A DNA stretch of 63,920 nucleotides, filler included, from Octopus bimaculoides (Eukaryota): NCBI RefSeq assembly GCF_001194135.2. It is 8 parts of 6 records of this genome, joined end to end, with 100 filler letters (N's around TTAATTAATTAA, not from the genome) between each part and the next. Parts side by side here need not be neighbours in the genome. Positions count along the whole stretch, not along the records: positions 62,869 to 63,920 come from NW_026438495.1; 7 more parts are not named here. One strand, given 5' to 3'. Positions 62,483 to 63,920 of the stretch are shown piece by piece. A model generated the notes under the pieces. It searched no databases. It saw nothing but the letters and a program-made list of their open reading frames with translations, and was not told the DNA's origin. Both the position numbers and the translations under genes were made by a program. Positions within the stretch are counted from its first letter, which is position 1, and every line of letters starts with the position of its first letter.

Positions 62483-63110
62483 TTTTTATAGTATGTATGT
62501 CCATTAGCAACCAACTTCTTACACCTTTATCTGATTCAGTAAATTCAGCAGACATCTTTGGCTATGGCTCTTTTCACTGTGATTAATTCCAAATAAGAAT
62601 TTTGTTTTTAGAAAACAACTAGCGAAATCGTGATGGCACCTGTACCAGCGGGGCACTAAGAGCACCGTCCGAGCGCGATCGTGGCACGTAAATAGCACCA
62701 GCCTGATCGTTACCAAAGTCGCCTCCCTGGCACTTGTGCCAGATGGCACGTGTAAAGACATTCGAGCGNNNNNNNNNNNNNNNNNNNNNNNNNNNNNNNN
62801 NNNNNNNNNNNNTTAATTAATTAANNNNNNNNNNNNNNNNNNNNNNNNNNNNNNNNNNNNNNNNNNNNATAATAATAATAATAATATTAGGGACAAAATA
62901 CAAAATTACAGGTAAAAATGCAATTAAAATCAATTTATAAAAAATTAAAATTAAATTGAGCTTTACAGATTAAAATGTATATAAATATAAAGTTTTAGGG
63001 AAAACAAAACAAGTTTAATGAACTCATCGATGAAAATTCACTATCACATAGAAAAAAATTAATAAAAGCACAATAAATGAGTATAATATAATAAAAAATT
63101 GATTTTACAG

Positions 63111-63920
63111 CTTCCTGTCTATTCGAAAATTAGTTATGAAACGAACGTAGTCATTTTAAGACCTAACGATTAGCTGTATTTTTTAATAGAATTTATTTTC
63201 GATAATTTTAATCGATTGTAATCGATTTAAATTTCTTTCTATTCGAAAATTAGGTATGAAACGCGTGTAGTCATTTTAGGAGCTGACGATTAGCTGTTTA
63301 TTTGAATAGAATTTATTTTTGATAATTTTAATCGATTTTAATCGATTTAAGTTTCCTTTCTATTTGAAAATTAATTATGAAACGCGCGTAGTCATTTTAA
63401 GACTTGACGATTAGCTGTATTTTTGAAGAGAATTTATTTTCGATAATTTTAATCGATTTTAATTGATTACAGTTTCCTTTCTATTTGAAAATTAATTATA
63501 AAACACGCGTAGGCATATCAAGACCTGACGATAAGCTGTATTCTTGAATAGAATTTATTTTCGATAATTTTAATGGTTTTTCATCGATTTCCTTTTCCAT
63601 TCTATTCGAAAATTAGTTATGAAACGCACGTAGTCATTTTAAGACATGACGATTAGCTGTATTTTTGAATAGTATTTATTTTCGATAATTTTAATCGATT
63701 TTAATCGATTTAAGTTTCCATTCTATTCAAAAATTAGGTATGAAACGCGCGTAGTCATTTTAAGAGCTGACGATTAGCTGTATGTTTAGATAGAATTTAT
63801 TTTCGATAATTTTAATCGATTTCAACCGATTTAAGTTTCCTTTCTATTCCAAAATTAGTTATGAAACACACGTATTTATTTTAGACCTGACGATTAGCTG
63901 TATGTTTGAATAAATTCTTT
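63111..63920 (+). ncRNA. 121-bp tandem array (at least 6.6 units, runs off the window) whose consensus is a hammerhead ribozyme
   Basis: Unit anchors at 63121, 63241, 63362, 63483, 63604, 63725, 63846. Consensus GAAA-CGCGCG-TA-GTC-ATTTTAA-GAC-CTGACGA-TTAGCTGTATTTTTGAATAGAA...TTCTATTCGAAAATTAGTTAT-GAAA. Confidence 0.8.

What the first reader, a model, noticed from the sequence alone, without database searches (positions are those of the whole stretch)
63111..63920. 121-bp tandem repeat that is essentially one hammerhead ribozyme per monomer: candidate ultra-small retrozyme/circular RNA
Seen: each unit has GAAA, a palindromic CGCGCG, TA, GTC, a 7-nt loop, GAC and CTGACGA. The following TAGCTG(T)ATTTTTGAATAGAA pairs (with G-U wobbles) with TTCTATTCGAAAATTAGTTA just before the next GAAA, forming a stem II of about 20 bp capped by AATCGATT hairpins. 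Individual units carry scattered lesions (CTAACGA at 63163, TTGACGA at 63404, AAAA at 63500, ATGACGA at 63646), but the consensus is canonical, and 63522-63635 has all core nucleotides intact. No minus-strand core was seen. Established: tandem hammerhead repeats (newt satellite 2, schistosome SM-alpha, cave-cricket satellites, non-LTR retrozymes) self-cleave into monomers that can circularise and spread using other elements' RT; a palindromic stem III suits dimeric cleavage in tandem transcripts. Inference: a circularised 121-nt monomer would close all three stems with almost no spare sequence. It is smaller than the roughly 170-400 nt I recall for metazoan retrozymes, so it may be an undescribed minimal family. 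Penelope or RTE elements seen in this window are candidate mobilisers.
Basis: partly seen in the sequence, partly recalled or inferred. Interest (0 to 1): 0.88.

Follow-up and report, generated by a model that had tools for sequence, protein, structure and literature searches.

The report
Decayed 121-bp hammerhead-like satellite array
An AT-rich 121-bp tandem repeat whose consensus, but none of its seven actual copies, spells a complete hammerhead self-cleaving RNA motif; it is most likely a dead relic of a small ribozyme-bearing repeat of a known kind, not a demonstrably active or record-small circular RNA.

Summary
The repeat is real: period 121, 6.7 copies, 63104-63916, 86% matches. Its plus-strand consensus places every hammerhead core nucleotide (CUGACGA, GAAA, A15.1-U16.1, A17) at the junction of three helices. 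Shuffles reproduce this in about 1e-5 to 2e-4 of trials.

The support stops at the consensus:
- All seven copies carry at least one disabling lesion in the core or in the 3-bp helix I.
- No two consecutive units are complete.
- Core and helix positions mutate as fast as the rest (8% from consensus).
- None of 44 base pairs shows a compensatory change.
- Rfam finds no hammerhead, even at E<=10.
- No related copy turned up in any collection I could search.

The architecture is unusual. The bulk of the monomer extends helix II (20 bp), helix I is a 3-bp hairpin, 10.1/11.1 is U.U, and a stable helix III forms only between the CGCGCG hexamers of neighbouring units.

The size claim fails: a 2026 preprint reports retrozyme consensus lengths of 51-972 bp.

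Best reading is a decayed hammerhead-derived satellite or retrozyme-like array (about 0.55). Chance resemblance is about 0.3. Interest is moderate to low unless intact, expressed copies exist elsewhere in the unidentified source genome.

The parts
63104..63920 (+). 121-bp tandem array, 6.7 copies, cut off by the end of the piece. Weak homology to the unit starts at about 63095, inside the apical hairpin and not at the ribozyme site.
   Evidence: TRF period 121, 86% matches, score 1204; register and consensus.
62869..63103 (.). Non-repeat AT-rich flank (17% GC) beginning with (ATA)6. It contains no ORF of note.
63142..63267 (+). Hammerhead-register unit 1 (hexamer of the previous unit through its own hexamer). 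Core is CTAACGA, with G5 changed to A at 63165. Hexamers are CGAACG and CGCGTG. Dead.
63262..63388 (+). Unit 2. Core CTGACGA (63283) and GAAA (63379) are intact. Helix I is GTC/GAG (C2.1 changed to G at 63282). Three helix II pairs are broken.
63383..63509 (+). Unit 3. C3 is changed to T (63404) and G12 to A (63500). Dead.
63504..63630 (+). Unit 4. The core letters are intact (63525; GAAA 63621). Helix I is GGC/GAC (63513). Helix II has mismatches at 63533 and 63543. The hexamer is CGCACG.
63625..63751 (+). Unit 5. C3 is changed to A (63646). Otherwise this is the best-preserved helix II: arms 63654-63674 and 63721-63740, apical hairpin 63675-63720.
63746..63872 (+). Unit 6. The core is intact (63767). 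Helix I is GTC/GAG (63766). The hexamer is CACACG. The following cleavage-site region has lost one base (63873/63874).
63867..63920 (+). Unit 7, truncated by the end of the piece. GTC of helix I is replaced (63874-63877). Core CTGACGA is at 63887.

Best explanation
The array is a decayed relic of a hammerhead-derived tandem repeat, of the kind called a hammerhead satellite or non-LTR retrozyme, or possibly derived from a Penelope-like element's minimal hammerhead.

Inferred mechanism for the founder sequence (the consensus):
1. A plus-strand multimeric transcript folds so that the CGCGCG hexamers of two successive units pair. This gives an 8-bp helix III, ACGCGCGU with ACGCGCGU.
2. That helix encloses a 3-bp helix I hairpin (GUC-AUUUUAA-GAC), the core CUGACGA, a 20-bp helix II that carries the rest of the monomer, and GAAA.
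3. Cleavage after GUA releases 121-nt monomers.
4. Once ligated into a circle, the single hexamer has no partner. Helix III collapses to two pairs plus a GCGC loop, so the circle is protected from re-cleavage.
5. Reverse transcription by another element's enzyme would regenerate tandem DNA.

Shown here: the repeat, the consensus anatomy, its strand asymmetry, the predicted folds, and the decay of all seven copies.

Inferred only: transcription, cleavage, circularisation and retrotransposition.

At this locus the element is not functional. Since amplification it has evolved as neutral DNA, with local duplication and CpG decay.
For: - All core nucleotides sit in the right order and exactly at the three helix junctions of the consensus.
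- Chance reproduces this in 5.5e-5 of shuffles (whole monomer), 1.7e-4 (junction only) and 9e-6 (with the observed helix III length).
- The 127-nt consensus construct folds at -35.7 kcal/mol with z = -5.3. The hammerhead-competent fold is 0.8 kcal/mol above the minimum.
- The structure is plus-strand and RNA-specific because of G.U pairs. The minus strand folds at -25.9 with z = -3.5. A DNA-complementarity search does not report the helix II arms.
- The consensus folds much better than any real copy (-13.9 to -28.8), as expected for drift away from a structured founder.
- GC content is concentrated in the 32-nt ribozyme junction: 47% against 20% elsewhere.
- The dimer's minimum-energy fold forms the inter-unit helix III.
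- The odd features have precedents. Axolotl HHR_Amex2 has U.U at the base of helix II and a two-pair helix III with a tetraloop. PLE minimal hammerheads have a long helix II, a 2-5 bp helix I, a palindromic helix III and work as dimers. [quoted passage not shown]
- Low GC and tandem organisation match non-LTR retrozymes.
Against: - Rfam has no hammerhead match at E<=10 on the whole piece or on one unit.
- There are 0 compensatory changes in 44 pairs, and pairing is no better than in shuffles.
- Core sites are not conserved above background: core 4/77, helix I 5/42 and helix III 7/42 changed sites, against 66/817 overall (p = 0.5 to 1).
- No copy is intact.
- G10.1-C11.1, which is highly conserved in natural hammerheads, is replaced by U.U in all seven copies.
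- Helix I is only 3 bp. RNAfold prefers an alternative GUCA/UGAC pairing that sequesters U4-N7 of the core (probability 0.74 against 0.18).
- No loop-loop or pseudoknot tertiary contact was identified.
- No related copy was found anywhere. The family, its copy number and its host are therefore unknown.
Confidence: 0.55

Rival explanations
1. This is an ordinary AT-rich satellite and the hammerhead-like consensus is a chance resemblance. The dyad symmetry is a DNA-level property common in satellites, with no RNA role.
For: No covariation. No excess conservation of core sites. No Rfam hit. Non-canonical U.U at 10.1/11.1 and a minimal 3-bp helix I. All copies are lesioned. Under a lenient descriptor, chance is about 1e-4 per monomer per strand, which is not negligible if the first stage screened thousands of repeats.
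Against: The match is far better than the lenient descriptor requires: a 20-bp helix II abutting both core strands and an 8-bp palindromic helix III, seen in 9e-6 of shuffles. The fold is strand-specific through G.U pairs. GC content is concentrated in the junction. The palindromic helix III is a hallmark of animal hammerheads and was not imposed by my search.
Confidence: 0.3
2. The family is alive and this locus itself contributes. Transcripts of this array are cut into 121-nt units that circularise, making it an active ultra-small retrozyme.
For: The core letters are intact in 4 of 7 units. One type I reading, 63522-63635, keeps core, GAC and GUC. Animal minimal hammerheads with low in vitro activity are thought to use host factors.
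Against: Every unit has a lesion in the core or helix I. Each site's partner elements in the neighbouring units are broken. There are no two consecutive complete motifs, which is the criterion for 'active' in the 2026 preprint. Real copies fold poorly and not into the junction. The substitution pattern is neutral.
Confidence: 0.07
3. The repeat is a tandemised fragment of a Penelope-like element's terminal repeat that carries a minimal hammerhead. It would then not be an independent circle-forming element.
For: It shares with PLE minimal hammerheads a short helix I, a long helix II, a palindromic helix III and a need for dimers. The 2026 preprint links retrozymes to PLE terminal repeats.
Against: No PLE sequence or ORF lies in the piece. 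G10.1-C11.1, conserved in PLE minimal hammerheads, is absent. Helix II is 20 bp plus a 45-nt cap, not 6-8 bp.
Confidence: 0.08

Closest known systems
Metazoan non-LTR retrozymes and hammerhead satellites (newt satellite 2, axolotl Rtz_331/353, coral and mussel retrozymes; Cervera & de la Pena 2020, PMC7229834)
   Same: Head-to-tail tandem repeats of a short, low-GC monomer with one hammerhead per unit. The predicted monomer RNA is highly self-paired. Helix III is weak and palindromic, favouring cleavage in multimers. HHR_Amex2 also has U.U at the base of helix II.
   Different: Those carry type I hammerheads, with a roughly 6-bp helix I, a 4-bp helix II and loop 1-loop 2 contacts, and the rest of the monomer closes helix I. 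Here helix I is a 3-bp hairpin and the rest of the monomer closes helix II. The monomer is 121 bp rather than 170-400. No expression data exist and no copy is intact.
Minimal hammerheads of Penelope-like elements (Cervera & de la Pena 2014, PMC4209133)
   Same: Short helix I (2-5 bp), enlarged helix II, palindromic 15.x/16.x positions, an extra nucleotide after A9, proposed action as dimers, and high sequence decay within genomes.
   Different: They keep G10.1-C11.1. They sit in terminal repeats flanking an RT-endonuclease ORF and mostly occur as single motifs. Here 10.1/11.1 is U.U, helix II is 20 bp, and the motif fills a satellite monomer.
Small tandem retrozyme families predicted in vertebrates (Li, Clavereau & Pollet, bioRxiv 2026, 10.64898/2026.07.22.740005)
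   Same: Tandem repeats with a hammerhead per unit and consensus lengths down to 51 bp, with a mean of 98 bp in Sarcopterygii. A 121-bp unit is therefore within the reported range.
   Different: Their detection used type I canonical and minimal models and required at least two consecutive complete motifs. This array meets neither criterion.
Type II hammerheads (Perreault et al. 2011, PMC3088659)
   Same: Read linearly, the unit is 11.x strand - GAAA - short helix III hairpin - cleavage site - helix I hairpin - CUGACGA - 10.x strand. Stems I and III are capped and the rest hangs on stem II.
   Different: Type II hammerheads are known from bacteria and archaea. They usually have a loop I pseudoknot and longer stems I and III. 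Rfam's type II model does not match here. Repeat-associated eukaryotic hammerheads are almost all type I.
Double-hammerhead cleavage of multimeric viroid and newt transcripts (Forster et al. 1988, as cited in PMC4209133)
   Same: A stable helix III forms only between two units, so multimers cleave and monomeric circles are spared.
   Different: Here only the neighbour's hexamer is needed and the resulting hammerhead is contiguous (127 nt, helix III open). It is not two interlocked ribozymes.

Membership tests
Hammerhead ribozyme | Core C3 U4 G5 A6 N7 G8 A9, G12 A13 A14, A15.1-U16.1 and H17 (not G), in the right order | tested here: met
   Met in the consensus. In the copies, CTGANGA is intact in 4 of 7 and GAAA in 6 of 7.
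Hammerhead ribozyme | Three helices radiating from the core at the correct junctions | tested here: met
   In the consensus, helix I is 3 bp, helix II 20 bp and helix III 8 bp between units. The junction is the minimum-energy fold apart from the helix I register.
Hammerhead ribozyme | G10.1-C11.1 closing helix II | tested here: not met
   U.U in all seven copies. A precedent exists in axolotl HHR_Amex2.
Hammerhead ribozyme | Match to a curated covariance model (Rfam hammerhead types I, II, III, HH9, HH10) | tested here: not met
   No hammerhead family at E<=10 on 1052 nt or on a 135-nt single unit. The 88-nt insertion in helix II and the short helices may explain the miss. I could not test a trimmed sequence.
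Hammerhead ribozyme | Helices supported by compensatory changes, and core more conserved than surroundings | tested here: not met
   0 of 44 pairs are compensated, with 87.8% paired against 88.3% in shuffles. Core 4/77 against 66/817 changed sites overall, p = 0.5. Only six or seven closely related copies were available, so power is low.
Hammerhead ribozyme | Tertiary contact between helices I and II (loop-loop or pseudoknot) | not tested
   None is obvious by eye. In sequence this AT-rich, complementarity to the AUUUUAA loop would not be informative.
Hammerhead ribozyme | Site-specific self-cleavage | not testable with these tools
   Needs in vitro transcription.
Non-LTR retrozyme | Short head-to-tail tandem repeats with low GC, without LTR, PBS or PPT | tested here: met
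   121 bp x 6.7 copies, 27% GC. Definition taken.
Non-LTR retrozyme | Type I hammerhead with canonical helix sizes | tested here: not met
   The bulk of the monomer is on helix II, and helix I is a 3-bp hairpin.
Non-LTR retrozyme | [quoted passage not shown] | tested here: not met
   Every unit is lesioned. Criterion taken.
Non-LTR retrozyme | Monomer RNA predicted to be highly self-paired | tested here: met
   z = -5.3; linear monomer -25.9 kcal/mol.
Non-LTR retrozyme | Expressed as linear and circular monomers; target-site duplications; co-occurrence with PLEs | not testable with these tools
   There is only one array boundary, no transcript data, and the source organism is unknown.
PLE minimal hammerhead | Palindromic 15.x/16.x, enlarged helix II, short helix I | tested here: met
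   CGCGCG hexamer, 20 bp and 3 bp respectively. Features taken.
PLE minimal hammerhead | Location in the terminal repeat of an RT/GIY-YIG element | tested here: inconclusive
   No such ORF lies in the 1052-nt piece, but the piece is too short to exclude one nearby.
Type II hammerhead | Stems I and III capped by loops and stem II open, with a loop I pseudoknot in most members | tested here: inconclusive
   The topology fits when read linearly. The pseudoknot was not tested, Rfam's type II model does not match, and helix III is only two pairs within one unit.

The most novel reading that the evidence does not exclude
Intact copies of this family exist elsewhere in the unidentified source genome. 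They would make 121-nt circular RNAs from a eukaryotic tandem-repeat hammerhead whose non-catalytic sequence is entirely an extension of helix II (a type II-like permutation). A shared palindromic hexamer would act as a multimer-only switch for cleavage. That would be an undescribed architectural variant of animal retrozymes and one of the smallest ribozyme circles open to experiment.
Probability: 0.2. Interest if true: 0.6.

Novelty: new variant of a known kind. Interest (0 to 1): 0.35.

Why it matters
If active relatives exist, this family would show that repeat-borne eukaryotic hammerheads are not confined to the type I layout. It would also show that a circle barely larger than the ribozyme itself can carry the retrozyme life cycle, and it would give a compact system for testing multimer-only cleavage through an inter-unit helix III. 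As it stands, the locus is a decayed copy with no evidence of activity. Its immediate value is as a lead for searching the source genome and its transcriptomes.

Tried and rejected
**Searches that found nothing**
- Rfam at E<=10, on the whole piece and on one unit, gave only noise. The best hit was the U4 snRNA 3' half at 18 bits against a threshold of 46, which I rejected.
- An intact ribozyme-block pattern found nothing in viral, metagenome or prokaryotic genome collections. No copy in this window matches that pattern either, so it could only have found intact relatives.
- Patterns validated against the window found nothing in prokaryotic genomes or viral contigs.
- One 17-mer viral hit (L001) is unrelated GC-rich coding DNA, so it is chance.
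- Phage and plasmid BLAST found no match.
- ORFs in the array are at most 34 aa and are not on record.
- A protein search with the cyclic translation of both strands, meant to catch spurious ORFs called on other copies, found nothing.
- Sequence strings were absent from the paper library and from two papers' supplements.

**An error of mine**
- The first metagenome scan used a gap of 25-45 nt where the true gap is 24. The pattern does not match the window itself, so that zero is uninformative.

**Readings considered and rejected**
- A type I reading with an open helix I was considered. The 13-mer pairs with itself over only 3 bp before an A.A mismatch, so this is less stable than the hairpin reading.
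- A minus-strand ribozyme is ruled out because the core is absent there.
- The Tabler 1994 paper on a 3-nt helix I could not be read. Only its title was seen.

Full report

The piece 62869-63920 holds a 235-nt AT-rich unique flank (17% GC). This is followed by a tandem array with period 121, 6.7 copies, 63104-63916, 86% matches and no indels. I cut the copies in register and built the consensus: GTCATTTTAAGAC / CTGACGA / TTAGCTGTATTTTTGAATAGAA / 45-nt apical part / TTTCTATTCGAAAATTAGTTAT / GAAA / CGCGCG / TA.

There is no CTGANGA on the minus strand.

**2. Anatomy**

On the plus strand the consensus has every hammerhead core nucleotide at the junction of three helices.
- Helix II is 20 bp: 6 pairs, a bulged U, then 14 pairs, with three G.U. 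It is capped by a 45-nt arm containing an AAUCGAU/AUCGAUU hairpin.
- The pair next to the core (10.1/11.1) is U.U in all copies.
- Helix I is a 3-bp hairpin, GUC-AUUUUAA-GAC.
- Within one unit, helix III can only be A-U and C-G around a GCGC loop.
- In a multimer, the hexamer of unit k-1 pairs with that of unit k, giving the 8-bp duplex ACGCGCGU/ACGCGCGU.

The result is a contiguous 127-nt ribozyme with helix III open. RNAfold gives this junction as the minimum-energy fold of the 127-mer (-35.7 kcal/mol, z = -5.3) and of the second unit of a dimer. In a circular monomer helix III is lost.

Two cautions apply:
- RNAfold prefers GUCA/UGAC, which sequesters U4-N7 of the core, to GUC/GAC (probability 0.74 against 0.18). 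The hammerhead-competent fold is 0.8 kcal/mol above the minimum.
- Because the rest of the monomer hangs on helix II, the layout is type II-like. It is not the type I of animal repeat hammerheads.

**3. Is it more than chance?**

- A deliberately lenient descriptor (helix I >= 3, II >= 4, III >= 3) matched 11 of 200,000 shuffles of the monomer.
- With the hairpin kept and the 32-nt junction shuffled, it matched 170 of 1,000,000.
- With the observed helix III length, it matched 36 of 4,000,000.
- The structure is strand-specific. The minus-strand 127-mer folds at -25.9 (z = -3.5). A DNA-complementarity search does not report the helix II arms, because they depend on G.U pairs.
- GC content is 47% in the 32-nt junction and 20% elsewhere.

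These results favour a real hammerhead ancestry over coincidence but do not prove it.

**4. State of the copies**

Every unit is damaged in the core or in helix I:
- Unit 1: G5A at 63165.
- Unit 2: helix I GAG at 63282.
- Unit 3: C3U at 63404 and G12A at 63500.
- Unit 4: helix I GGC at 63513, plus two helix II mismatches at 63533 and 63543.
- Unit 5: C3A at 63646.
- Unit 6: helix I GAG at 63766.
- Unit 7: GTC lost at 63874-63877, with one base lost at the 63873/63874 cleavage site.

Only 2 of 7 hexamers are still CGCGCG. In a type I reading it also keeps GAC and GUC. However, its helix II base is weakened, its hexamer is CGCACG, and both neighbouring cores are dead.

Real copies fold at -13.9 to -28.8 kcal/mol and mostly not into the junction.

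| Region | Changed sites |
|---|---|
| Core | 4/77 |
| Helix I | 5/42 |
| Helix III | 7/42 |
| Helix II | 22/280 |
| Apical arm | 22/293 |
| Overall | 66/817 |

The core is not significantly more conserved than the rest (p = 0.5). On the six-unit alignment, none of 44 pairs has a compensatory change, and 87.8% of cells are paired against 88.3% in shuffles.

The array has therefore evolved as neutral DNA since it was amplified. With only six or seven close copies the power is low, so this says nothing about the founder.

**5. Databases**

Rfam shows no hammerhead at E<=10 on the piece or on one unit. The 88-nt insert in helix II and the short helices I and III may explain this, but I could not test a trimmed sequence.

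No related copy was found in any of these:
- viral contigs
- prokaryotic genomes
- metagenomes
- phages
- plasmids
- the protein collection, through spurious ORFs
- paper texts and supplements

My first metagenome scan was mis-specified and is uninformative. A single 17-mer viral hit is chance. None of the searchable DNA collections is a collection of eukaryotic genomes, so these zeros say little. The source organism remains unknown.

**6. Comparison with what is known**

- Animal non-LTR retrozymes are tandem, low-GC repeats with type I hammerheads, expressed as circles of about 170-400 nt. Amphibian ones need dimers because helix III is weak and palindromic. HHR_Amex2 has U.U at the base of helix II and a two-pair helix III with a tetraloop.
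- PLE minimal hammerheads have a 2-5 bp helix I, a long helix II, a palindromic helix III and low activity, but they keep G10.1-C11.1.
- A 2026 preprint reports retrozyme consensus lengths of 51-972 bp, so 121 bp is not below the known range. Its criterion of two consecutive complete motifs is not met here.
- Type II hammerheads are known from bacteria and archaea. Repeat-associated eukaryotic hammerheads are almost all type I.
[quoted passage not shown] 1994. I saw that title only in a reference list and could not read the paper.

**7. Verdict**

| Reading | Confidence |
|---|---|
| Decayed relic of a hammerhead-derived tandem repeat with an unusual helix II-anchored layout | about 0.55 |
| Chance resemblance in an ordinary satellite | about 0.3 |
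| Tandemised PLE fragment | about 0.08 |
| Present activity of this locus | about 0.07 |

The size-based novelty claim fails. What novelty remains is architectural, and it depends on finding intact, expressed copies elsewhere.

Noticed in passing
63104-63920 (CpG sites of the consensus, e.g. hexamers at 63142, 63262, 63504, 63625, 63867): Substitutions are enriched at CpG sites: 14/106 against 52/711 (p = 0.053). Of the 14 CpG changes, 11 are transitions, against 18 of 52 elsewhere. CGCGCG decays to CACGCG, CGCACG, CGCGTG and CACACG. This suggests the host genome methylates cytosines and that the array decays at the DNA level.
   Followed up: partly
63205-63227, 63325-63348, 63446-63468, 63688-63711, 63809-63832: Each monomer contains an internal 10-bp sub-repeat, ATTTTAATCG x 2.3-2.4. 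Its two ATCGAT palindromes form the apical hairpin, so part of the monomer arose by a small internal duplication.
   Followed up: partly
63150-63169 and equivalents: GUCA just after the cleavage site is complementary to UGAC inside the core (U4-N7, possible because N7 = C). RNAfold prefers this 4-bp pairing to helix I. It could be an inactive alternative conformer or simply a weakness of the motif.
   Followed up: partly
63365/63374 and 63486/63495; 63599 and 63720; 63784 and 63904: Adjacent units share private variants: C96T with G105A in units 63270 and 63391, T88A in units 63512 and 63633, and T31G in units 63754 and 63874. This points to local duplication or unequal exchange within the array, not independent insertions.
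   Followed up: no
about 63095-63104: The array's 5' boundary falls inside the apical hairpin of the unit (AATTGATT...ACAG resembles the variant in unit 63391). It does not fall at the predicted cleavage site. The other boundary is beyond the end of the piece, so target-site duplications cannot be checked.
   Followed up: no
62869-62886: An (ATA)6 microsatellite lies at the very start of the piece, and the flank is only 17% GC.
   Followed up: no
63360-63441 and 63602-63683: There is a weak Rfam match to the 3' half of U4 snRNA (18.1 and 12.2 bits against a threshold of 46), driven by AUUUUUG in the 5' arm of helix II. I judged it to be noise.
   Followed up: partly
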